A stretch of 64,000 nt of DNA, taken from contig NC_085847.1 in the NCBI RefSeq assembly GCF_035594765.1, positions 6,572,001-6,636,000 of the forward strand, given 5' to 3'. The notes beneath the pieces were generated by a model, which saw nothing but the letters and a program-made list of their open reading frames with translations, searched no databases and had not been told where the DNA came from. Of the stretch, positions 3,420 to 49,680 are shown one piece after another. Numbering within the stretch: the stretch's first letter is position 1; the number at the start of each line of letters is the position of its first letter. The DNA comes from Anolis carolinensis. Lineage: Eukaryota. The translations under genes and the position numbers were made by a program.

Positions 3420-3870
3420 ACTAGCTGTAGAAGGAAAGCAGTTGGACACCACTTTGACTGCCGTCACTTAATGCTACGGGATCCTGGGAGGTGTAGTTCC
3501 TTCTCTACCCAAACCATAACTCCCAGGATTCCATAGCATTGAGCCAGGGCAGTGACCCCACATGAACTGCTGTGGATCAATGCTGTGGAGTGGTGGGCTT
3601 TGTAGTTTGATGAGGCACCAGCACTCCTTGGCTGAGGAGACCTTGAAAGACTACAACTCCCAGAATCCCAAAGCATCGAGCCATGGCAGCTTAAGTGAGG
3701 TCAAATTGCATTCATTCTACATTGTAGATCAGGCATGGGGAAACTTTGGCCCTCCAGGTCTCTCACAACTCTCACAATTGCTAACTGCTGGTAGACTGTA
3801 AGGAATGGTGGGAGTTGAAGTCCAAAACACCTGGAGGGCCAGCATTTGCCGGTGCCTGGTGTAGATGCAC
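3420..3870. mobile_element. Non-autonomous palindromic DNA-transposon (MITE) fragments; many more copies across the window (e.g. 1100-1263, 1890-1990, 24480-24880, 37390-38020, 51410-51560)
   Basis: Recurring GGGTGCATCTACAC / GTGTAGATGCACC ends and internal CTGGGAGTTGTAGTTT / AAACTACAACTCCCAG inverted modules. Family not identified. Confidence 0.6.
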
Positions 3871-11342: not shown

Positions 11343-14337
<2,995 letters not shown>

Positions 14338-36329: not shown

Positions 36330-36985
36330 CCACAATTCCGAGGGCGGGCGGGCCCAAGTGTGCGCGCGCCGGAGCGGGAGAAGCGCCCTGGAAGCGCCAC
36401 AAGAAGCGCTTTTGGAGCCCGGCCTGCCTTGGAGCCCGTTCCTTTGACGTCACAAAGGCCCACGACACAATGCCCGCCGGGAGGCGTAGTCCCTTTTCGA
36501 GCGCCCGCTGGGCGCCGTCCTCATTCCTCTCCGGAGGAAGGGACCACGAGCTCCAGCATGCATTGCAGCCGAGGCTCGCCCCGCCTTTGCCTATAAGTAC
36601 CTCCATCCGGGGCTTTGGCAGGGCACTGCTGTTTGGCGACTCGTCGCCATTAAGGGGCAGCGGCGGCGGGGCTGTTTGGGCGGCCCGGGGGGCTCCCTTG
36701 GGCGGCGAGCGGCGAGCGGCGAGCGCTCCTTCCTTCCTTCTTTCCGTCCGTCCCTCCCTCCCTCCCTGTCCCCTGCTCTCCGCGGCCTGCCTGGCTCGGC
36801 CCCACCACCCCTCGGTTCTTTTCGGGAGGCCAACGATGTCGCCATGAGGGAGGCCGAGAGGAGCGCGCCGCGCCGACCCCGTCGCCGCCGGGCCATGCGC
36901 CTGGCCTTGGGCTTGGGCCTCGCGTCCTCATCCCCGCTCTCGCTTCTTCTTCGTCTCCACAGCGGCGCCGCGGAGGCGCCTTTGG
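36330..36985 (+). promoter_or_regulatory. RNF10 promoter and long GC-rich 5'UTR
   Basis: CpG island; CRE TGACGTCA at 36445-36452; GC box CCCCGCC and TATAAG (~36592); uATGs at 36836, 36844 and 36895. Confidence 0.7.
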
Positions 36986-37182
36986 ATGCTCCAGAGCCCC
37001 GCGCCGGGAAGCCCAGCGGTTGCGGCGGCGGCAGTGGTAGTTGCCACGGCGGCAGCGGCAGCCAACCCTCCGGCAGACAGGATGGACAAGAGCAGCCCCT
37101 GCGGCTCCGGGCCCGGCCCCGGCGCCTCCGCCTCCTCCTCCTCCTCGGCCGGCGCCGCCAAAGGACAGCCGCCGCGCTCTAA
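36844..37182 (+). CDS. Upstream ORF overlapping the RNF10 start out of frame (112 aa; second in-frame ATG at 36895)
   Basis: gccATGAGG at 36844 and gccATGCGC at 36895, open to TAA at 37180-37182. Overlaps the RNF10 CDS by 197 nt in another frame. Translation is inferred, not shown. Confidence 0.5.
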   Translation: MREAERSAPRRPRRRRAMRLALGLGLASSSPLSLLLRLHSGAAEAPLDAPEPRAGKPSGCGGGSGSCHGGSGSQPSGRQDGQEQPLRLRARPRRLRLLLLLGRRRQRTAAAL

Positions 37183-37240
37183 CTCCGCCGGGCCCGCCGG
37201 GGGAGAGTCCAAGCCCAAGGGCGGTAGGTCCCGGAATTCA

Positions 37241-37271
<31 letters not shown>

Positions 37272-40200
37272 ACACGCCTCCACTCTTGGGCTCGTCCTGA
37301 GGGATCGAGTCCCCGGGACCCGCTGACAGCTGAGGCCTAGCACAGCCACGGCTGCCCTGCCCCGCCCCGCCGGTTCTTTTGGGACTCCCCACAGCAGGAA
37401 CCCTGGGGGTTGAAGTCCAAAGCCCCTCTGCGACTCTGGTGCTACAGGTGTTTGGGACTTCAGCTCCCAGGAGCCTCTGCGAGCTTTGGTAAACACGGCT
37501 CTCTCTGAGGCCTAGCACAGCAGTGGCACTTCTGAGGCACTTCCCTGAGGCGTTGAAGTCCAAAGCCCCTCTAGAGCTGTGGTTCTCAACCTGTGGGTCC
37601 TCCAGTGCTTTGGCCTACAACTCCCAGAAATCCTCCCCCCCCCCCCTCAGCCACTTCAGGAAGGGGCCTGAGGCAGAGATTTCTGCGAGTTGTAGGACAA
37701 AACACTTGAGGACCCACAGGTTGAGAACCACAGCTCCAAAACTATGGTGCTACAGGTGTTTAGTACTTCAGCCCCCAGAAGCCCCTGCTGCTGTGGCCAA
37801 GGAGCAGGCACTCTGGGAATTGAAGTCCCTGGCCCCAGAGATTAGGAAACCCTGCCTTGTTGACACCTGAGGCCTAGCCTAGCGATGGCTGTCAAACTCA
37901 AGTCCTTTGGGTATTTTGGACTTCCACTCCCAGAAGCCTCCGCTGCCTTGGGCAATGGGCAGGGCCTCTGGGGGCTGAAGTCCGACAGCCCTGGAAGGCC
38001 AGAGGTTGGGACACATTCATGGTGAAAGGAATGCCTTGGCTCCTTGCGACAGAAGCACAGGAGGAGGAGTTTTGGGAGTGTTTTCCCTTTCCCAGATCCC
38101 GTGGCAGCAGAAGGGGTGTCAAACTGGATTAATTTAAGAGTGTAGATGCACCCTTAGCTTCCTTCTCCCCACCCAAATGCCCATTTCCTGTTCTTTGGCA
38201 CCTGCATACAAAACGCCTCAGGAGGGTTCCCTGGATTATCTAGATTTCCTTTGAGGAAACGATAAGGCTCCTTTCAGGGAGTTGGGGGGCCCTAGTTGTT
38301 GTCAGCCGTTGCTCTGTCAGACGTGGCCTCCCCAAGTCCAAACACAAAATAAGTGGCGTGCATGTCATTTTATTTACAGTATTTTTATTTAATTTTGAGT
38401 GACACGAAGCCGAGCTTGTGAATATTGAACCCGTCGGAAAGACACTGTTTCCATGTTTGCTGTGTACCAGAGTTTGGACTCAGGTCCCTAGGAAACTGCT
38501 TTTTCCAGAAATATGTGTTTTTTGTTTACTTAAGAGTTGTTTTGGATTTTTTTTTTAATGAGTGGCTTTTTGACAAATGTTGTGAATGCCTGGATAGCTC
38601 ATACGTCCTTAAAAAGGCTTCACTAGAAACTGTCTTGCGAAAGAAGTGCATTGGGCAGATGAGTGTCAGCAGCTGCTGGAGCTTTCAGCCTTTGTTGGGA
38701 GACGTAGGTACAACCTTTCCCAATCAGGAAACCCCTGAATTAAAATCATTATAGCTAGTTTTTGTGGGGGGAAAACTATTCTTTAAGTCTCTGACTTTGG
38801 CAGAATCCCTAGTGAGCTCTCTCAGAACCCTTGAATTGAATGTGAGGCCCTCTCTCCCATCCCTTTGTTGCTGATGTTATTTCTCCCTCCTAAGCTGTCA
38901 ATTGTTACTGCCCTAGACAGTTTTGTCTTTTGCTGGAGCTAAATCAATTTCAATGATCTCAGGATATTGCAAAATTGTAGAGTCTCGGTTTAATATCTTA
39001 GCTCATTTCAGAGTCTAGTAATATGCTGTCGGAGCAGCAAGACTGTATAGTGTGGGGCATTTTTTGATGATGACTGGAGCAGTGATAGTCCAATCATAAG
39101 AGAGCTGGTTCTGCTGGGTTGTGTTGTTGTGTGCCTTCAAGTCATTGCCATCCTGTAGATCACAAGGGATTCATAGCAAGATTCATTCAGGGGTGGTTTA
39201 CCAGCATTGCCTTCCTCTGATGTTGAGAGAAGGTGACTTCCACAAGGTCAGTTGATGGGTTTTCATAATTGATCCAACTCCGGAAGAGTCCAAACCAATA
39301 TACCATATGGGGTTTAGTATCCAATGCATCCTGTTTCCAGTATGTTGCCCTTATTTGAGGCCTAGTACTTCTACAAACCTTGCTTCTCAGGCTAGAGGCC
39401 GTTCTTACTGTGGAACAGACCCATAGAAATGTCAGGCATGAAAACATCCTCTCAACAGCCCAAAGCCTGGGTAAATAATGAGCGGCTTTGCTTGCCAGCA
39501 GAAGGAGAACAAAGAGAGGGCAAGGAGAGCTTCTTGTGGAAGGACGTTCCGTGGCTCTTGGCCTCATGCTTGTGACGAAAACGAAGGTCTTTGAAGGGAG
39601 TTGTTACTGCTAGTAAGGAACGTAGCGTCATGATAACAGGGTTTTGGTTGAGCGAGGGGTACTTTCTTTCCTTGCGCGGAGTGGCCGTGTGTGCAAACAC
39701 TGATTGTGTTGTAATCTGCCTGGGCAGCAGTGCAAATGGCGGAGCCTCATGATGTAATCCAATAATCCTATTAAGGTCAGTGTGGCAGTTCTTCTGTTGC
39801 AGGATGGCTGGTCTGTTATGGGTCGGCTGTCACCAAAGGCCCACTTGTCAAGGAGGAGCCTTCAGAAGGGCCCTGGCTTCTCTTGGGGGCTCCACAATCC
39901 CTATTCCGTAGGAGACTAAATTGCAGACATTCTCAGTCATGTGAAGGTGCTTTTGTATACATTTGATATGTTAAAAGAACACTGCATTCATGCAATTACA
40001 AAGAATCAAGAATTAAACAAAATCTGCTGGTATGTGGAAACAGAAGAAAATACCTCATTTTTATGTTCAGCATCTATAATGTTTATTGGTTTGTGTGTGA
40101 TGAGATCTTATGTGTGAGGTTTATATTCAGCCTCAACATGGCCTAGCAGTGGGTTCTTTCTTAGAAATGCTTTATACTGTCACAATGACAAGAAAAAAAA

Positions 40201-43200
40201 TACATTTAGAGGGGACTGTTGGTAGGAAAGCTGACTTTGTGCTACAGATTTCACAATGTGTTGCTGAGGGATGAAACCTTCCGCCTGTAGATGCAATTGA
40301 AAAGGCAAAGATTTCCCTAAACATATTTTGTAAATGAATGTGGATGTAGTATACACAAAGATCCGAGTTCTTTGGTCACCTTGAGTCATTTCTGTTGATC
40401 TTCACAGCAGCTTTCAATACCGTTGACCATATTATTTTTTGGATCTCTTGGTCTGGGATATATATAGGAGTCTGAATTATTTTGTATGCTACTTAAAATG
40501 AAATTTCACCTGTGCTTGATAGCCAGCTATTGCTTTGGCATGGTCGAAGCAACCTGACTTAAAAGGGCTGCTTTTTAATTGAGTTAATGAACAGCATAGT
40601 CAGGCCCCCATTTTCCATTCCCAGTACTTTCACTGTTAACATCGAGCCTTCTCTCTTTTTAGATGGAAAAAATGCGAATGGATCCAAACAGCGTTATAAC
40701 CGTAAACGAGAAGTCTCATATCCCAAAAATGAGGGCTTCTCGGGCCAGTCCCGTCGCTCCGCTTCACAGAAAAGCAAAGCTTTTAATAAGGTGCCTCCTC
40801 AGAGAGGAGGACAAGGCAGCGGCGGCAAGCCTTTTAGCTCTTCTTCTAATGGTGGAAGACGAGATGAGGTGAGAGCTACACACATTGATATGGTGATATA
40901 AAGATTAGTTTTCCATAGAAAGAAGTGTGAGTGGTATTTTATGGGAAACCGTGGATGCTTGGTACGTACAGGGATCCTGTAAAGTGCTTTTACTCCCCTC
41001 TTCCACTGGATATGATGACAGGCATGAGTAAACATCACTGCTTTTGTGCAGTCAGAATAGAGTCATGTTTCCAATACATTACTGGTTTGCGTTGATGAAA
41101 CGAGTGTGTTTCGCTTACAGAATTAATGGAGGCAAAGAAGGAATGTAAATGGTACGGGACTGGACTGGATGGCCCTTGGGGTCTCTTCCAATTTTATGAT
41201 TATTTATTTATTTATTTTTCAAACTTATATGCCGCCACTCCCCTAGGGCTCAGAGCGGCTTACAAGAACCAGCTAAAATCAACAATTTAAAAAACATTTT
41301 AAAAACATCCTAAAAGCACCTTTTAAATTATTATGTGTTAAAAAGCTATACTGAGAATTCTAACCATATAAATACCAGGTTGACTTCATGTCACGCTGTG
41401 TAGATGCATTCACTATAGCTTTACAGTGAATGAAAATTATCCCAGCAGCTTGACTTGTGAATTTATTCCTAATTGAATCATTCTGAGGTATAAGAGTCAG
41501 GCAACTGATTGGTTTGAGCGTTGCTGTCTGTTACTTTATCTGCTGACGCTGCTTCTTCCATTAAAACATTGGATGCAGAAACCTTTGTAGCCACTTCTCC
41601 ATAGCTTTGCGCGTGTTTGTTTAAGTGGCCTTTATCTAAGCTTCTTGTTGGGCCGTGCATCCCAACGTTACATACATTAAGTCATTTAAACATCATAATA
41701 AGCATGCAGTTCCAGGGAAAGAAAGCTGACTCAGAAAATTGTTCTTCCATGCATCAGCCACTCGCTGACTAGTTTAAAAGCAGGTTTGTAAAGAAAAAGC
41801 TCACTGAAATGGTTGAGGAGATGCAGGGAGGCACATCTCCAGTGGAAGTGGCTCAATGGCCGTGATGTGGCCCTTTGCAAATGCTTTCTTGGTATGTCTT
41901 TCTAGGTAGCAGAGGCCCAACGGGCAGAGTTCAGCCCTGCCCAGTTCTCTGGCCCCAAGAAGATTAACCTGAACCATTTGTTGAATTTTACCTTTGAGCC
42001 TCGTGGCCAGGCCGGCCACATTGACGGGAGCGGCCGTGGCACTTGGGGGAGAAGGAACAAGTGGGGCAACAAGCCTTTCAGCAAGGAGCTCTTCCTCCAG
42101 GCCAAGTGAGTGGGTCCATACTGGTTCAGATCCCCGTGAGAGGTTGCCAGCCATCTGTACAGGTGGGCTTTCGTGGCAGCCAGGTGTCCCTGTTGTGGTT
42201 GCATTGCCATTTCCATAGCCCTTGTGCCATGGGTATGACTCCTGAATCTCATTCCTTGCTCATGTGCCACACAGAGCGACACAGCTCTGATTGGGAAAGC
42301 CAGTTCTGTCCTAGTCCTGTGCCCAAAATAATTTCAAAACCAGAAAATCCTAGGATTGGATTAATGTGCCGTTAGTTGATCATTGTTATATGGGATTCTC
42401 TGTTCCAAAGCCTTTATTTCTTTTCCCAGTTGCCAGTTTGTGGTGAGCGATGACCAGGACTACACAGTCCACTTCTCTGATCCAGACACTTTGGTCAACT
42501 GGGACTTTGTGGAACAAGTGGTTAGTAGGAACCGGCTTGCCGTAGAAGTCTTTATTAGCGGCCACTTATTTTCTAAACGAACCTGTCGCTCAGCTTTATC
42601 CTCATACAAGACAGTGTGGGAACAAGCTTTAGAAACATATATGTATGTGTGTGTGTTGGGGGGAGATGGGAGAACATTAAGGTAATTTAATACGTTGGGA
42701 TAAGACTTTAGCAAAAGCTGTTTAGCAAGCCCTCATTCTGTGTTGCTGCTGTTTGTTGTACTGTATAATTGCATTATTGGTTAGTGTTTGTTGTTTTACT
42801 TGAGAGGATAGAAAGAATATGAGTCTTACAGTTAAGTGTTTATCTTGAAAACCATGCAAGTGTTCAAGTATTGTTGGACTGCAACTCCCAGCATTCATCA
42901 CCATTAGCTATCCTGGCAAGGGTTGATGGGAGTTGCCATCCAGCAACATCTGTTGGGCCTTATGATTCCCACTCAGGCCCCAAGGGGAAGATACTCCCAG
43001 TAGACCTATAGAGCAGCCTCTTCGACCTGCGACCCTCCAGGTGTTTTGTACTTCAGCTCCCAGAACTCCTGACCATTGAACAAGCTGGGAGTTGGAGGCC
43101 CAGACACCTGGAGGGCCGCAGGTTGAAGAGGCCTGCCATAGAGAGCGATACACCGGATTCTTTTGGCACTTTCCAGCGGATTTGCAGCCACGAAGTGCCG

Positions 43201-46200
43201 TCCTGCCCGATCTGCTTGTACCCGCCCACGGCCGCCAAGATCACCCGCTGTGGGCACATTTTCTGCTGGGCCTGCATCCTGCACTACCTGTCTCTGAGCG
43301 AGAAGACTTGGAGCAAATGCCCCATCTGCTACGGCTCGGTCCACAAGAAGGACCTGAAAAGGTAACGCGGTTCTTGAAGCGGGCGCCACCTTTGCCTCGC
43401 GCGGCCAGTCTCCCGTCACTTAGTGCTTCCCTTGCTTCGCAGTGTTGTCGCTCTGGAAACCCATCAGTATGCAGTCGGGGACACCATTACCATGCAGCTG
43501 ATGCGGCGGGAGAAGGGGGTCTTGATTGCCCAGCCAAAGTCCAAGCTGACCAATGTGACGCAGCCGATCCACCTGGGAGGTGAGCGCTGAGGGTGTCATG
43601 GAATGGAAGGCAGTTATTGCAAGCATCCTGCCTCCAAGATCTTGGCAGTGGTTCTTCAGAGGCCCATCGTAGCATCTCTAAGCCTCCCTTCAGAAGCAGA
43701 AAATCACCCTAATCTCCCATTTTGCGTGCCCCTTTGTCCAGATGAGCAACACAGCCAGTATTCAAAGCTGCTTCTGGCCTCGAAGGCTCAGGTGCTGCAG
43801 CAGGTGATCTTGGAGGAGAAGGCCGCCCTCCTGCGTCAATACGAGGAGGACAAGCACACACCCGAAGCGTGTTTCATTGAAGCCGCCATCCAGGAATTGA
43901 AGGTGAATGCCCTCGAGATTTCACCGGGGGAGGGGGGGGGTGAGGTCTGTCTCCGGTGTATTCTGTTCTGTACCATGATATCTGTTAATACTGATTCCTT
44001 TCAGCATTTTCATTGTGCAGTCCTTTGTTTTGACAGAATTGTTTGAGGAAATTGAGTACATATAAGCATAGATTCTGCTCAGAAAAATAGCTTGAATCAA
44101 TAGTTGTCAAGGCAGTGTGTAAGACATGTATTATTATTACTGCTCAGAGTTCCCAGAACTGTATTTCAACATTACCACATGTAAGTTGTGTGGATTTTTT
44201 AGTTTTACTGCATAGTAATGGGAGAGGAGAGATACTACAGCACCCAGCATGCCTTGTTCTGGAGAGTTTGGCTGTATTTGGGTTTAGTTGATGCTGGAAC
44301 ATCATGATAGCCAACTCATTGGGGAGGAAAAAGTCCCAAATATCAAAGTTTAATGTTGTGACATGCTATAATGGACAAGACTTCCTGGTATTTTTGTTGT
44401 CAAGCTGACAGAAAGGGGTCAATGGTTTTGGTATGCCAGGATAAGCAAAGGAGGACCCAAATGGTTGTGTGCATAACATGGTGCTGCTTGGCTTGGCCTT
44501 TAGGACCGAGAGGGCACATTGCTGACTGGCAAAAACCACAATGCCGGTGTTGTCGGTACCACAGCAGCTTTGGAAGAGATGGTTGTAACGGAGCTGCCTG
44601 ACAAGGAAGCAGCAGCAGTGGCAATATCCCAGGAGAAAAAGGTACGAGCCCCGAGTGTGTCTCCGCTTGGTGCCATGAAGGTCTTTGGAAGGGAGTCATC
44701 CTAATTGGAGTGGTATGGCTTGAACCCCTGTTAAGGAAGTCTCCCTTTTCCAGACCGATCCCTAGAAAGTGGCGGCAGAGATGCTTCAGGGCGCAGTGGC
44801 ATTCTGTAGCAGAGGGTCTTGTGGCTCCAACAGGGATGACAAAGATGGCTGCTAACTATTTTCACTTTCAGCAGTGCGTGATACAATACCTCTCTGCATT
44901 TGATGAAGAAATTGTGATGTCTCCCTCTGAGGATTCTGCAAGCGGGATTCAGGCCCCGTTGGAAATGGAAGAGTCTGCAGTGGACAACAAGGAAGAGCCT
45001 GACCTGGCGCTGAGTGAAGGGAACAAATCTTGTCTGGCCGAATCTGCTCCTGAGAAATCTAGAACGGCACTCGGCACTGGCCACCCAAGTAGCTCCCCTT
45101 TCTACTACTTCTACCAAGGTTAGTGGGATGCTAAGCTGTCGTGCTCCTTGGAGAAGGTTTGCATCTGAATTGTTGCACCGACTTTGATGTCCAACCCTGA
45201 CCGGACTCTCGTCGTCGGGAATGGGTCACTGGACAGTTTGGATGGAAGCAAGCAGGGTGTGGGGAAACCTGGGGCTGCTGGACGTGGAGGGTGGCGCTGT
45301 TCCCTGCGCTTCCAGTCACTCTCCCGTGCTTCTCTCCCCTTCCTGCAGCTGAGGACGGGCAGTGCCTGTACCTCCACCCAGTGAATGTCCGCTGCCTTGT
45401 CCAGGAGTACGGCAGCCTGGAGAAGAGTCCTGAGAAGATCACTGCCACCGTGGTGGAAATATCTGGCCACTCCATGACCGAGGTAGCAATGCTTCTCATT
45501 ACAGTGGTGACTTTAGCAGGTTCTGTTGTGCCAGGGAATGAGAAGTTAAATAGCACGTGACTTAGTGGAGCTTGACCACCTTTCTTTTTGGAGGGATGAC
45601 TTAGGTAAATCCATTCTTTAAAACCCTGGCTCCTCCTTGCAGGATGTGCGTCAGCGCCATCGTTACCTTTGCCATTTGCCTCTCACTTGCGAGTTCAGTA
45701 TTTGCGAACTGGCCCTGAAGCCCCCTGTTATCTCCAGGGAAACCATGCAAATGTTTTCAGGTGAGCGCTCGTTTCCCTTTCCGTTGTACGTTGTTCCTTT
45801 GTCCGTCCTCAGCTGTAGTCAAAGAGTTTCTGCTCATGTATTTGTGGCTTGTGTCGACAGTGAGATCGTTGGGTTTGGTGAATTTGAGGAAGCTGTAAAT
45901 GCAGTTGAACTATTAAACCTGAAAGTAAAGCTCTAGGGCCGAGCTTGGAAAGCACTGCCTGGGAGGGACGAGGGGCTGCCAAGGGGTTAGTGAAATAATT
46001 GATTTTGCTTTTAGTCCTTTGACTCCCCAAATGTTTCTTAGATGACATTGAAAAAAGGAAGCGTCTGAGACAGAAGAAAGCTCGCGATGAGCGACGCCGG
46101 GAACGCAGAATTGAAATGGAGGAAAATAAAAAGCAGGGGAAGTGTAAGTGGCATTCTTACGTTGGTCCTGTGTCTCTTTCTGTACTTTTGAATGCAAGGG

Positions 46201-47597
46201 CTGAGGGTTGACACACATAGGCAAGTCCCCGAGCGGTGTTGAAGGCTTCCCTGTGCCTGCCTTTGGCCATTTAGTCTGGCAAGGTAGCCAAGGAGAAGTG
46301 TGGCTGCACATTTGCATCTAGTGGGACCTAGCACCCAAATCTGTCCCTTGGGTGGACTCTAGTGGTCTCAGGAGATGTTCTTGATTGAACAGGACTGTCA
46401 TAAAGATGGAACTGAAGAGGTTTTTTTTGTCTGCTTGCTTAGATCCAGAGGTGCGTATTGCTTTGGAGAATCTGCAGCAGTTCCCTGCCTTCAGTGCATG
46501 TTCAGGAGAATCGGATGGGACCGAGACCCAGAGCACCCCTTTGATGTCTTCCTCGGGCAGAAGCCCTGTTTCTCAACCAGGTGAGCAGCCAAGTGCCTCC
46601 AGAATGAAGTATGCTATGCCCTCACTTGAGAAAGTGCTGTCAGATGACTCTCCGTGGGCTTGAATCTTGAGCGTGCGGCCTTCCTCCTTACAGAGCCCTT
46701 GCTGACTCCGCTGTCCTCTGCCACCAGCCCTGGCAGCCCTTCCTTCAGTCCTGGGAACCTGGAGGAGGAAATGGCCCTCCCCTCATTTGCTGAGGTGCGT
46801 GGCCCTTCCTTTGTGCCCGGCTTGGCTTTGGAGGAATTATTTAGCAGATGGACATCCTGCTGTCCACAAAAGGTTTTCCAAGCCGTTGACATTCCATTAG
46901 CCTCTTATAAACACATCTCTCTCCTTGACAGATGCTGAGAGCTGGAAAAGCTAAACCAGACACTTGGAATATTTCCCAGCCAAAGAAGAAAGGTGAGCGA
47001 TGGTCCCATCCACGGTACAGTGCTTGTGAAAGTGATCTGTCTGGCCTGCAGCGAGCTAAAAGTATTTTTTTCCTTCCAGAAGAGAATGCTAACCTGGCCC
47101 CTCCAGCTCCGGTGGACAGCGATGGGGAGAGTGACAATTCGGACCGTGTTCCTGTGCCTAGTTTCCAGAATTCCTTCAGCCAAGCTATTGAGGCAGCCTT
47201 CCTGAAACTGGATAAACCATCCACTTCCGACCACCACTTGGGTAAGCAGAGCAACGATGCTCAGCTTCTTAATCCCAATACAGTCCTCCCTCCCTCCCTG
47301 TGAAGGCTCCCATAGTCCCAATGGCAAGGGCAGTGTGGCCATGCCTCAGGAGCACTTTCGGATCTTAAAGAGCAAAGGAAAATGTGGCAAGCCAAACTAG
47401 ATGGCTGCCATATTGTACAGGCACCAAGATGGGGTTGCGTTTGGGGCGTGATTCTAGTTAGCAACTCTGGCGAAGGTGTTCCTCCCGAAGGCCACCTAAG
47501 GCTTGACTCTTGTTCCTTTGCAGAGGAAAAAAGAGGCAAGAAGAAGAAGCAGAAGCAAAAGCTGCTCTTCAGCACTTCGGTCGTCCACACCAAGTGA
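36986..47597 (+). CDS. RNF10: RING finger protein 10 E3 ligase, ~830 aa, 17 exons: 36986-37223, 40663-40868, 41906-42105, 42430-42520, 43177-43361, 43443-43579, 43742-43902, 44504-44641, 44872-45118, 45349-45482, 45643-45760, 46042-46143, 46443-46580, 46694-46794, 46932-46992, 47080-47241, 47524-47597
   Basis: C3HC4 [46 protein letters not shown]; [17 protein letters not shown]; YYFYQAEDGQ; C-terminal [19 protein letters not shown]. Phases consistent across all exons (2493 nt). AATAAA at 48477-48482. Confidence 0.97.
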
Positions 47598-49680
47598 CCC
47601 TCCTAACAGACAGACTCGGCCTCCTGGTTTCTTTGTTTGCTTTTGTGTTTTTTTGCTGCTATAGACAAAAAAAAGGTATTTAAACGGGGGCAGAATAGGT
47701 TTGTTTCTGGGACGTGGGGTGGGCTTTAGGGCATTTTAATGAAGCAACGGGTTCAGTTCGTATTGAAGCAGAAAGTCTTGAAATGCAGATTGGGAAGCCA
47801 AAGTTTCAGGGTTGGGCCAGGCTTGGTGCCTTTGGCCTGGGGTGGCTGGTGCAGCTGCTTTTGACACTCGGGAGGCAGAGAGAGGACGGGAAAGGGACGG
47901 GAAGGAGCGTGGCAGTGGGCCAAACATCCCCTCCTCTGTCTGTTTGCCCCCTTTCTGTAAACGGGGAGATAAATGTACTGGGCTCTAGAGCACTGCCTGA
48001 ATGTGCGGCATCCATGGACTCCCCTCACAAAGCAAAGGGGGAAAGGAGTGGAAGCCATTCAGCTCCTGCTCAAAGTTGAAGGGCTATGCGCTGTCTAGGG
48101 TCGAAATGCCATTGTATTCAACGAGGCGAGAGACACTCTTGGCCTCCTGGTGCTAATTCGATCACTTGGAGGGAGAATTCAAAATGCGTGCTTCCTTGAG
48201 TCAAACAGGGTTCTCCTCAATGTGCCGCAGGCTGTCCAGGGCGTATGGGCCTCGTGTTTTCCTGGCCCTGGGGTTCCATTGGGGTTGTATTCTGTGCGTT
48301 TCAGCCATCCTTCTCTCCCACTCCCCCCCCCCCCTTATTTTTCTTTTTGGTGTGTGGAGAAGTCTCCTTTGGCACTGCTTTGTGGCTTGATCTGAAACTA
48401 ATTCCTACTAAAAAAAAAGTGTCAGTTCCGTTGAATACGAGGGACATGTCAGTGTACTATACCAGCAAATAGTTGCAATAAAATCATATGCACAACAGCG
48501 GTGGCGTTTGACTCTGTGCCATTTTTCCTCTTGTTGAATCTTTTCCTTAGCGGCCTACCTCTGGTTGGTCACATTGAATTGGCCCCTTCGGCCTGAATTG
48601 GGATCATGTGCAGAGGGGGAGCTACAAGGGGGGGTCATGCTCCCTTCAGACTTCCGCTGGGCCTTTTGAAGTTGCTTAGTTATCTCAAGACAAGGTGTGA
48701 AGGATTGTCAAGGTCCCTCCCTCTGCAGTGCGAGAAACTGGGGACTAAGGAACACTTGGTGGGTTGCAGAATGCTTGTCTGGGGGGGAGGGGGTGCCCTG
48801 GTCTTACCCCTTACCACCATGAGAGGGTGCTGTTGCCTTGCTTTTCTCACTGATCAACCAGAATAGTTCTACTGGTAGAGACCCAGGTATGGTGTTTGAG
48901 CTATATAAGTGGATCTTGAGCCAGAGCTATGAGGTCCTGTGGAGGATGGACAATACAGTGGGGCTGTGGGATCTGCTTAGGGTTTGGTTCTAGGACACCC
49001 CCCCCCCTTTTTTTCAGGTCCTATTATATAGTGACGTCCCTTGTGTAGAATGGCACAATCAAGGTTTGGTTTTTGAAATTATTTTTTGGGAATCTGTCCC
49101 AGCTGTGGGTGAGTGGACATGGAGGGCTCTGTCTCCAGCACCATCCCTCTTCTATGGCTGCTGCCACCAATAGCATTCTGGTAAACCAGGACTGAGAAAT
49201 ACAGATTCCACAAAGATGTGTTGCAGGGCATTTCCCGTTGTCCCTCATGACTGGCTTTGTGGGTCTTGGCCTGCGGGCGGGCGTTCCTCAGCTTCTCCTG
49301 GTCATGCTTTACACCTTGGGTTACCTGGCAAAAACAGTGCCCTTGTATTTGAAATGTCTCATCTGTATTAACAGGGAAAGCTTTGAAGTGGGCAAGAAAC
49401 AAGAGGAAAGATAGCAAGGATTTGAATTGAAGTCCAGCCACATCTAAGGGGCTGCATGACTATGAGCTACAGAGTTCTTTGAGTCTTTTAAAAATGAAAT
49501 AATGTGATTCCTTATATTCCAGGGAATAGGTAGAAACCAGATGACTACTCTTTGCTTTTAACTTATTTTATCAACACATAAAATTAACACAGGCAAAAAA
49601 GAGTGGAGGGAGGGGTTTCACTCTTGCTGGGAAGCACCGCTGAGATTGTCTGTTATGACTCTTGGAGGGAGAGGAGCGGC

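What the first reader, a model, noticed from the sequence alone, without database searches (positions are those of the whole stretch)
36836..37182. ATF4-like uORF switch on RNF10, the 40S ribosome quality-control ligase
Seen: a 3-codon uORF ATG TCG CCA TGA (36836-36847) whose stop overlaps the next start (ATGA). A second uORF with two gccATG starts (36844, 36895) runs 197 nt out of frame over the RNF10 start to TAA 37182. The main ATG (36986, tggATGc) has weak Kozak context, and the strong in-frame ATG (37082, aggATGg, MDKSS) also lies under the uORF. Distances from the uORF1 stop are 47 nt to the inhibitory ATG 36895 and 138 nt to the main ATG. Known: ATF4 uses a 3-aa uORF plus an overlapping uORF for delayed re-initiation under eIF2alpha phosphorylation, and RNF10 ubiquitylates uS3/uS5 on stalled 40S. 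I recall a translated uORF being reported for mammalian RNF10. Inference: RNF10 synthesis could sense ternary-complex or 40S availability through its own leader, forming a feedback loop.
Basis: partly seen in the sequence, partly recalled or inferred. Interest (0 to 1): 0.8.

Follow-up and report, generated by a model that had tools for sequence, protein, structure and literature searches.

The report
Conserved RNF10 leader uORF cluster

Summary
Every coordinate in the finding checks out. A 3-codon uORF (36836-36847, MSP-stop) has a TGA that overlaps the ATG of a 112-codon uORF (36844-37182), which has a second in-frame ATG at 36895. That long uORF runs out of frame across both RNF10 starts: 36986 in weak context and 37082 in strong context.

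I fetched the same locus from the lizard Phrynosoma and from three bird-like contigs. All share the layout. ATGTCGCCATGA and CGGGCCATG are among the four longest invariant runs in a leader that is only 35% invariant. Spacings are held to within 6 nt, and every indel inside the long uORF is a multiple of three.

This is already published. Ford et al. 2025 (Cell Rep, PMC12008924) report three AUGs in the human RNF10 5'UTR, conserved from human to frog. They also report translated uORFs and a >9-fold reporter de-repression when the uORF starts are mutated. Relief came with 60S-biogenesis failure. A mouse and human RNF10 uORF peptide is also published.

The specifically ATF4-like, eIF2alpha-dependent reading fits the architecture but is untested. 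The inhibitory AUGs lie 0 and 47 nt after the short uORF.

Verdict: real, functional, already known.

The parts
36592..36627 (+). Putative core promoter: TATAAG (36592-36597) and an Inr-like GGCACT (A at 36625), about 33 nt apart. Inferred transcription start near 36625.
   Evidence: Read from sequence. The TATAAG and the CACTGCTG block are kept in Phrynosoma; ACTGCTG is invariant in all five sequences. Not confirmed by reads: searches gave none.
36625..36665 (+). Cap-proximal conserved block: ACTGCTG, then GGCGACTCGTCGCCATTA and GGGGCAGCGGCG. It holds a small palindrome (GGCGA-CTCG-TCGCC). Function unknown.
   Evidence: Longest invariant runs in the five-sequence leader alignment: 18, 12 and 7 columns. 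Its reading frame relative to the uORFs is not conserved, so it is not a coding extension.
36836..36847 (+). Mini-uORF ATG TCG CCA TGA (Met-Ser-Pro-stop); A at -3.
   Evidence: The invariant 12-column run starts exactly at the ATG and ends exactly at the TGA in lizards and birds. The A at -3 is also invariant.
36844..37182 (+). Long uORF, 112 codons plus TAA at 37180-37182. It is out of frame with RNF10 and covers both RNF10 starts. It is the orthologue of the published mouse and human RNF10 uORF peptide.
   Evidence: The ORF is present in all five sequences (94-112 codons) and always ends inside exon 1 after both main ATGs. All indels inside it are multiples of 3. The Phrynosoma copy is annotated as a hypothetical protein, P0001. 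The N-terminus resembles the mouse peptide MKAENRCRRRPPPA.
36895..36897 (+). Second in-frame ATG of the long uORF, 47 nt after the mini-uORF stop.
   Evidence: CGGGCCATG is an invariant 9-column run. It lies 44-50 nt after the mini-uORF stop in all five sequences.
36986..36988 (+). First RNF10 start codon (MLQSP...), in weak context.
   Evidence: T at -3 and C at +4 are invariant in all five sequences. It lies 132-138 nt after the mini-uORF stop.
37082..37084 (+). Second in-frame RNF10 start (MDKSS...), in strong context. It is still under the long uORF.
   Evidence: Purine at -3 and G at +4 in all five sequences. ATGGACAAGAGCA is invariant.
36986..37223 (+). Coding part of RNF10 exon 1; donor G|GTAGGT at 37223/37224.
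   Evidence: The same GGCG|GT donor is present in Phrynosoma and the bird contigs.
43177..43359 (+). RING-finger exon of the same gene, used to confirm what gene this leader belongs to.
   Evidence: Pfam zf-C3HC4 and zf-RING_UBOX, E about 7e-8. Further RNF10-like exons run to the stop at about 47595. The order DYNLL1, COQ5(-), RNF10 matches Phrynosoma.

Best explanation
This is exon 1 of RNF10 in a squamate reptile. Its roughly 360-nt leader carries the orthologue of the upstream-ORF cluster that represses RNF10 translation in human cells.

Inferred path of a scanning 43S complex:
1. It meets uAUG1 (mini-uORF, A at -3). Complexes that start there make Met-Ser-Pro and terminate.
2. Eight nt on lies uAUG2. 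It starts the long uORF and catches complexes that leak past uAUG1.
3. uAUG3, 47 nt after the mini-uORF stop, starts the same frame. It catches complexes that have resumed scanning and re-armed quickly.
4. Any ribosome translating the long uORF is carried out of frame past both RNF10 starts and ends 41 nt before the first splice donor. RNF10 is therefore made only by complexes that escape all three uAUGs.
5. Escape becomes more likely when commitment at an AUG is slow or re-arming is delayed, for example when 60S subunits or ternary complex are short. RNF10 would then rise when initiation complexes stall.

Shown here: the sequence layout and its conservation. Shown in human cells by others: translation of the uORFs, repression, and relief on 60S-biogenesis failure. 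Inferred: the division of labour among the three AUGs.
For: Layout at the stated coordinates.

Gene identity:
- RING exon and a run of RNF10-like exons ending ...[11 protein letters not shown].
- DYNLL1, COQ5, RNF10 synteny with Phrynosoma.
- The uORF peptide resembles the published mouse RNF10 uPeptide N-terminus and the human epitope RLFGQQQRA.

Conservation between a lepidosaur and birds:
- ATGTCGCCATGA and CGGGCCATG are invariant islands in a leader with 35% invariant columns.
- Spacings are 44-50 nt and 132-138 nt.
- All indels inside the long uORF are multiples of 3, while upstream indels are of arbitrary length.
- The weak context of the first main AUG and the strong context of the second are kept.

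Literature:
- Ford et al. 2025 report three 5'UTR AUGs conserved from human to frog, two of them opening frames distinct from the CDS. They report Ribo-seq occupancy, a >9-fold reporter increase when the uORF starts are mutated, and de-repression on GTPBP4 depletion.
- RNF10 protein rises about 2-fold on RPL knock-down with no mRNA change.
- RNF10 translation efficiency falls together with ATF4 and MDM2 in eIF3 subunit knock-downs, which hints at dependence on re-initiation.
Against: - No transcript evidence for this species. The transcription start is inferred from a TATA/Inr-like pair and conservation only.
- Twenty runs hold 95-100% of the sampled words of 36600-37226. Fourteen of them are only guessed to be RNA and six are of unknown kind; none is on record as RNA.
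- No translation or reporter data exist for any sauropsid.
- My own comparison covers only one other lizard and three closely similar bird-like contigs. Mammal and frog conservation rests on the paper's statement, and I could not see its figure.
- The published authors describe the contributions of individual uORFs as complex, so my division of labour among the AUGs may be too tidy.
Confidence: 0.85

Rival explanations
1. One reading: an ATF4-type delayed re-initiation switch driven by eIF2alpha phosphorylation. The mini-uORF is the permissive first uORF. When ternary complex is plentiful, re-scanning 40S subunits re-arm in time for uAUG3 and are wasted on the long uORF. When it is scarce, they pass uAUG3 and start at the RNF10 AUGs.
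For: - Both structural requirements are met and conserved: a 3-codon 5' uORF, and an inhibitory uORF overlapping the CDS out of frame.
- The spacers are held within 6 nt across lizards and birds, while the rest of the leader has indels of up to 44 nt.
- RNF10 translation efficiency drops with ATF4 when eIF3 subunits are depleted.
- RNF10-dependent 40S ubiquitylation and decay are stimulated by ISR-activating conditions.
Against: - uAUG2 overlaps the mini-uORF stop, so the spacer is nil. uAUG3 is only 44-50 nt away, about half the ATF4 spacer (from memory), so many re-scanning subunits should pass it even without stress.
- The first RNF10 AUG is in weak context.
- The only published trigger for the reporter is a 60S-biogenesis defect.
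- No paper in the library links ISRIB or eIF2alpha-P to this leader.
- From memory, RNF10 is not among the classic eIF2alpha-P-resistant mRNAs.
Confidence: 0.3
2. The long uORF is conserved mainly because its product, the RNF10 uORF microprotein, has a function of its own. Repression of RNF10 would then be a side effect. This is not exclusive of the main explanation.
For: - Every indel inside the uORF is a multiple of 3, also in the part upstream of the RNF10 CDS.
- The N-terminal motif M-R/K-x-A-E...RRPRR...RAM is kept from lizard to bird and resembles the mouse peptide.
- Literature: the peptide was detected by antibody and mass spectrometry. It is listed as a conserved microprotein whose ORF scored in a CRISPR viability screen.
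Against: - Only 35 of 112 positions are invariant. The middle third is unalignable between lizards and birds, and length varies from 94 to 112 residues.
- The C-terminal half is constrained anyway by the overlapping RNF10 codons.
- Frame preservation is equally required for the uORF to keep covering the RNF10 starts.
- A CRISPR hit on a uORF cannot be told apart from an effect on RNF10 itself.
Confidence: 0.2
3. The invariant GTCGCCAT-containing blocks at 36643-36650 and 36839-36846 are DNA-level elements, such as YY1-like sites just downstream of the start site. Their ATGs would then be incidental.
For: - The same octamer GTCGCCAT occurs in both invariant blocks.
- It contains the GCCAT core of the YY1 site (from memory). 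In birds the mini-uORF reads AAGATGTCGCC, which is close to AAGATGGCGGC.
Against: - Invariance runs exactly from the A of the ATG to the A of the TGA, and the -3 purine is kept while -1 and -2 vary.
- A third uATG with no such motif is equally invariant.
- Frame and spacing are conserved.
- In human cells the corresponding uORFs are occupied by ribosomes, and mutating their starts de-represses a reporter driven by a heterologous promoter.
Confidence: 0.05

Closest known systems
Human RNF10 5'UTR uORF cluster (Ford, Garshott, ... Bennett, Cell Rep 2025, PMC12008924)
   Same: Same gene. There are three AUGs in the leader. One opens a very short ORF in the CDS frame, and two open an ORF in a frame distinct from the CDS. 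The paper states conservation from human to frog, and the lizard and bird copies here fit that description.
   Different: The human leader is also reported to have two further 5' uORFs with non-AUG starts, which I could not identify here. All functional data (Ribo-seq, luciferase, GTPBP4 knock-down) are human, and none exists for sauropsids. I could not see their alignment figure, so the one-to-one mapping of AUGs is inferred.
ATF4 (and GCN4) delayed re-initiation leaders
   Same: A 3-codon first uORF is followed by an inhibitory uORF that overlaps the main start out of frame. The main start lies far enough downstream (132-138 nt) for re-arming.
   Different: Here the inhibitory frame has two AUGs. 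One overlaps the first uORF's stop (ATGA) and one lies only 44-50 nt on, against roughly 90 nt in ATF4 (from memory). The main AUG is in weak context with a strong in-frame AUG 42-99 nt further on. The known trigger is 60S shortage, not eIF2alpha phosphorylation.
RNF10 uORF microprotein / uPeptide (Zeng et al. 2023, PMC10654591; Sandmann et al. 2023, PMC10032668)
   Same: The long uORF here is its orthologue, with similar N-terminal and C-terminal motifs and the same overlap with the RNF10 start.
   Different: The mouse uORF is given as 261 nt, against 339 nt with the stop here. The middle of the peptide is not conserved. No function of the peptide itself is established.

Membership tests
RNF10 leader uORF cluster (Ford et al. 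2025) | Lies in the 5' leader of an RNF10 orthologue | tested here: met
   RING exon, RNF10-like exon series, DYNLL1-COQ5-RNF10 synteny, and a uORF peptide matching the published RNF10 uPeptide motifs. Caveats: the name rests on literature motifs, synteny and memory, since no search returned a protein named RNF10. The transcription start is inferred, not mapped.
RNF10 leader uORF cluster (Ford et al. 2025) | Three AUG codons in the leader, conserved across vertebrates | tested here: met
   There are exactly three ATGs between the inferred start (about 36625) and the main ATG. All three are invariant in Phrynosoma and three bird-like contigs. Mammals and frogs were not tested here; that rests on the paper's statement.
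RNF10 leader uORF cluster (Ford et al. 2025) | Two AUG-initiated uORFs in a frame distinct from the CDS | tested here: met
   ATG 36844 and ATG 36895 share one frame, which is out of frame with ATG 36986. The same holds in all five sequences.
RNF10 leader uORF cluster (Ford et al. 2025) | uORFs are translated and repress the main ORF, with relief on 60S-biogenesis failure | not testable with these tools
   Only human data exist.
ATF4/GCN4-type delayed re-initiation leader | Very short 5'-proximal uORF that permits resumed scanning | tested here: met
   Three-codon uORF at 36836-36847, invariant. Permissiveness for re-initiation is assumed from its length, not measured.
ATF4/GCN4-type delayed re-initiation leader | Downstream inhibitory uORF overlapping the main start out of frame | tested here: met
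   The uORF at 36844-37182 covers ATG 36986 and ATG 37082 in another frame in all five sequences.
ATF4/GCN4-type delayed re-initiation leader | A spacer between the first uORF's stop and the inhibitory AUG long enough for most subunits to re-arm when ternary complex is plentiful | tested here: inconclusive
   The first inhibitory AUG overlaps the stop. The second is 44-50 nt downstream, about half the ATF4 spacer (from memory). The spacing is conserved but may be too short for tight basal capture.
ATF4/GCN4-type delayed re-initiation leader | Main-ORF translation induced by eIF2alpha phosphorylation and dependent on the first uORF | not testable with these tools
   No experiment of this kind turned up in the paper library.
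Conserved functional microprotein | Amino-acid-level purifying selection beyond what frame-keeping and the overlapping CDS require | tested here: inconclusive
   Indels are all multiples of 3, and short N-terminal motifs are kept. Only 35 of 112 positions are invariant and the middle is unalignable. Four sequences are too few for a dN/dS test.

The most novel reading that the evidence does not exclude
The mini-uORF may be more than a re-initiation ramp. It ends in Pro-stop, and its stop sits on the next AUG.

An 80S ribosome terminating slowly there would physically cover uAUG2 and make following 43S complexes queue behind it. That is the kind of stalled or collided pre-initiation complex that RNF10 ubiquitylates. 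The RNF10 leader would then be a built-in substrate and gauge of its own pathway, giving direct autoregulation. Its output would be set jointly by 60S supply, ternary complex and RNF10 activity.

The total invariance of all 12 nt, wobble positions included, is compatible with this. It is also explained by the double duty of TCGCC as codons 2-3 of the mini-uORF and as the Kozak context of uAUG2.
Probability: 0.12. Interest if true: 0.65.

Novelty: already known. Interest (0 to 1): 0.25.

Why it matters
RNF10 marks stalled 40S subunits for removal, so how cells set its level bears on ribosome homeostasis and ribosomopathies. The published human work already shows that the leader uORFs set that level.

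This window adds independent, sequence-level support that the arrangement is under strong constraint in sauropsids. The constrained features are:
- the exact 12-nt start/stop overlap;
- the two spacers;
- the frame of the long uORF;
- the weak-then-strong pair of main starts.

It also sharpens an open question: is the sensor reading 60S supply, ternary complex, or both? The conserved 44-50 nt spacer and the stop/start overlap are concrete handles for reporter experiments.

Tried and rejected
1. Mapping the transcription start with reads. The look-up of sequencing runs listed 20 holders: 14 only guessed to be RNA, 6 of unknown kind, none on record as RNA. Two local scripts compared fetched loci with the window: one search used the whole window as a local BLAST database inside the sandbox, and one search used 41001-48000 only.
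2. Getting a protein named RNF10 from a tool. The PDB sequence search gave only other RING proteins. The word search with the RING exon gave 33 unnamed fragments. Its best hit, P0008, sits on contigs L005 and L006, which are genomic contigs of another species and not transcripts.
3. Full-length orthologues, and so mammal or frog leaders. I did not use the large representative search, because the operators reserve it for open proteins or claims of absence. I sought no human sequence.
4. A known RNA family or unusual RNA structure in the leader. There were no Rfam matches at E <= 1. The leader folds no better than shuffles (z = +1.33).
5. The conserved cap-proximal block as an N-terminal extension of a uORF from a non-AUG start. 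Rejected, because its frame relative to the uORFs differs in the window, Phrynosoma and birds.
6. Scans of metagenome contigs for the invariant 12-mer. Not run, since any hit would probably be host or human contamination that I could neither identify nor use.

Full report
**What is in the sequence.** The finding's coordinates are exact.
- ATG TCG CCA TGA occupies 36836-36847 and reads Met-Ser-Pro-stop.
- The ATG at 36844 shares three bases with that stop. It opens a 112-codon frame that ends at TAA 37180-37182.
- A second ATG in the same frame lies at 36895.
- The RNF10 reading frame starts at ATG 36986 (MLQSP...) with T at -3 and C at +4. It has a second in-frame ATG at 37082 (MDKSS...) with A at -3 and G at +4.
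- Both RNF10 starts lie under the long uORF, in another frame.
- Exon 1 ends at 37223 (GGCG|GTAGGT), so the long uORF terminates 41 nt before the first splice donor.
- The region is a 70% G+C island.

**Which gene.** Downstream open frames give a series of exons, including a RING finger, and end in ...[11 protein letters not shown] at about 47595 (Pfam zf-C3HC4 and zf-RING_UBOX). The neighbours are DYNLL1 and COQ5 (minus strand) upstream, by colinearity with an annotated Phrynosoma platyrhinos chromosome. Earlier notes of this scan place SRSF9 and POP5 in the same window. That is the order I recall for the human RNF10 region.

No tool returned a protein labelled RNF10. The name therefore rests on three things:
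- the synteny;
- my memory of the human protein termini;
- the match of the long uORF's product to published RNF10 uORF peptides, which is the most direct evidence.

On that last point, the mouse peptide begins MKAENRCRRRPPPA and a human epitope reads RLFGQQQRA. The bird copies here begin MKEAESALRRPRRSPP and contain RILGRQQRA.

**Is it more than chance?** Within this one sequence the case is only suggestive. Three ATGs occur where dinucleotide shuffles give 1.14 (P = 0.077). A very short uORF whose stop overlaps another ATG arose in 0.14% of shuffles, and that test was chosen after the fact. The length of the long uORF means nothing, because all three frames are almost stop-free in this exon.

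The decisive evidence is comparative.
- A word search with the long uORF's product found one protein, a 'hypothetical protein' of Phrynosoma platyrhinos that starts at the second in-frame ATG.
- A search with the exon-1 frame found three unnamed Logan contigs, plus UniRef entries from parrot, goose and duck with nearly the same N-terminus. On that basis I take the three contigs to be avian.

All five sequences share the following:
- ATGTCGCCATGA is identical, with A at -3.
- The second in-frame ATG lies in an identical CGGGCCATG, 44-50 nt after the mini-uORF stop.
- The first RNF10 ATG lies 132-138 nt after that stop, with T at -3 and C at +4.
- The second RNF10 ATG is in strong context.
- The long uORF ends in TAA inside exon 1, after both RNF10 starts.

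In a leader alignment with only 35% invariant columns and indels of up to 44 nt, the four longest invariant runs are:
- an 18-mer and a 12-mer near the presumed start site;
- the 12-nt mini-uORF, from the A of its ATG to the A of its TGA;
- the 9-mer holding the third uATG.

Every indel inside the long uORF is a multiple of three (3, 6 or 9 nt). Those upstream are of arbitrary length. Lizards and birds diverged roughly 280 million years ago (from memory), so this is strong purifying selection on start codons, their contexts, the frame and the spacing.

**What is already known.** Ford et al. (Cell Rep 2025, PMC12008924) examined the human RNF10 leader. They report the following:
- at least four translated uORFs in Ribo-seq data;
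- two AUG-initiated uORFs in a frame distinct from the CDS;
- a more than 9-fold rise of a reporter when all five putative uORF starts are mutated;
- de-repression of the wild-type leader when 60S biogenesis is disturbed by GTPBP4 depletion.

They propose that conditions favouring stalled pre-initiation complexes also favour RNF10 synthesis.

Other papers agree. An independent study found RNF10 protein up about 2-fold on RPL knock-down with no mRNA change (PMC11604940). The long uORF's peptide has been detected in mouse and human cells (PMC10654591). It is listed as a conserved microprotein whose ORF scored in a viability screen (PMC10032668).

They are also published. The three AUGs in this window map naturally onto the paper's three: one short ORF in the CDS frame, and two starts of an out-of-frame ORF. 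I could not see the paper's alignment figure.

**How it most likely works.** Shown: the layout and its conservation (here), and translation, repression and relief on 60S shortage (human). Inferred: the roles of the individual AUGs.
- uAUG1 and uAUG2 are 8 nt apart, both with a purine at -3 and a non-G at +4. Scanning complexes should split between them.
- Starting at uAUG2 commits the ribosome to the long uORF and so past both RNF10 starts.
- Starting at uAUG1 gives a tripeptide, after which the 40S can resume scanning. Re-use of the overlapping uAUG2 is unlikely without a re-armed ternary complex.
- uAUG3, 47 nt on, catches subunits that re-arm fast.
- The rest reach the weak AUG at 36986 or the strong one at 37082.

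Anything that slows commitment at an AUG or re-arming would shift flux to RNF10. That includes shortage of 60S subunits or of ternary complex. The drop of RNF10 translation efficiency together with ATF4 in eIF3 subunit knock-downs fits dependence on re-initiation (PMC11534336). Termination of the long uORF upstream of all exon junctions could also expose the mRNA to nonsense-mediated decay. That is an inference and was not tested.

**The ATF4 comparison.** Two structural hallmarks are met: a 3-codon first uORF, and an overlapping out-of-frame inhibitory uORF. The spacer criterion is doubtful, at 0 and 44-50 nt against roughly 90 nt in ATF4 (from memory). The defining behaviour, induction by eIF2alpha phosphorylation, has not been tested for this leader in any paper I could find. 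It works somewhat like ATF4 on paper, but it should not be filed as an ATF4-type ISR switch.

**Other readings considered.**
- A function for the uORF peptide itself is possible and not exclusive. Only 35 of 112 residues are invariant and the middle is unalignable.
- A DNA-level reading is weak. GTCGCCAT occurs in both invariant blocks and holds a YY1-like core. However, conservation is bounded exactly by the start and stop codons, a third motif-free uATG is equally conserved, and the human reporter effect follows the start codons.
- No Rfam family matches, and the leader is not unusually structured.

**Limits.**
- The transcription start is inferred at about 36625 from TATAAG at 36592-36597 and an Inr-like GGCACT. 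The TATAAG is shared with Phrynosoma, and only the ACTGCTG part of the Inr-like block is invariant in all five sequences.
I worked beside those places afterwards and sent none of their letters to a search tool.
- Twenty runs hold 95-100% of the sampled words of 36600-37226. Many are small contig sets, of a size I would expect from RNA assemblies. Fourteen are only guessed to be RNA, six are of unknown kind, and none is on record as RNA. I count this as weak support at most.
For that reason I have no full-length orthologues and no mammal or frog leaders of my own. I sought no human sequence.

**Verdict.** This is a real, strongly conserved translational control element. It is the orthologue of one described and tested in human cells in 2025. 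It is new only as a sauropsid instance and in the detail of how tightly the 12-nt overlap, the spacers and the frame are held.

Noticed in passing
window 36625-36665: A block of about 40 nt at the presumed start site is better conserved than any coding part of exon 1: ACTGCTG, then GGCGACTCGTCGCCATTA, then GGGGCAGCGGCG. The runs are invariant from lizards to birds. The block holds a palindrome (GGCGA-CTCG-TCGCC) that folds as a small cap-proximal hairpin. It shares the octamer GTCGCCAT with the mini-uORF. Its frame relative to the uORFs is not conserved. Function unknown; it may relate to the two non-AUG uORFs reported for the human leader.
   Followed up: partly
window 36445-36452 and 36551-36568: Upstream promoter motifs read by eye: a perfect CRE palindrome TGACGTCA, and CTCCAGCATGCATTGCAG, which resembles a ZNF143/SBS site. 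Phrynosoma has a similar CCAGCATGCCTTGCGG. The bird contigs have ACTACAAATCCCGTCATGC at the matching place. The ATG inside this motif lies upstream of the presumed start site.
   Followed up: no
L001 10001-10276 (Phrynosoma platyrhinos, GCA_020142125.1): The public annotation calls the long uORF, from its second ATG, a separate 91-aa 'hypothetical protein' gene. It starts its RNF10 model only at 11622, so the true exon 1 of RNF10 appears to be missing from that model.
   Followed up: partly
window 37241-37277: A C17 run followed by (CA)10 begins 18 nt into intron 1, directly after the donor site.
   Followed up: no
window 37330-37860, and 42966-43076: Several copies of an interspersed repeat sit in RNF10 introns. 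Its translation repeatedly reads ...[11 protein letters not shown]..., and it contains GTTGAAGTCCAAAGCCCCTCT. Probably a SINE-like element. Similar pieces match near 3500 and 61000 of the window in the BLAST against L001.
   Followed up: no
   Followed up: no
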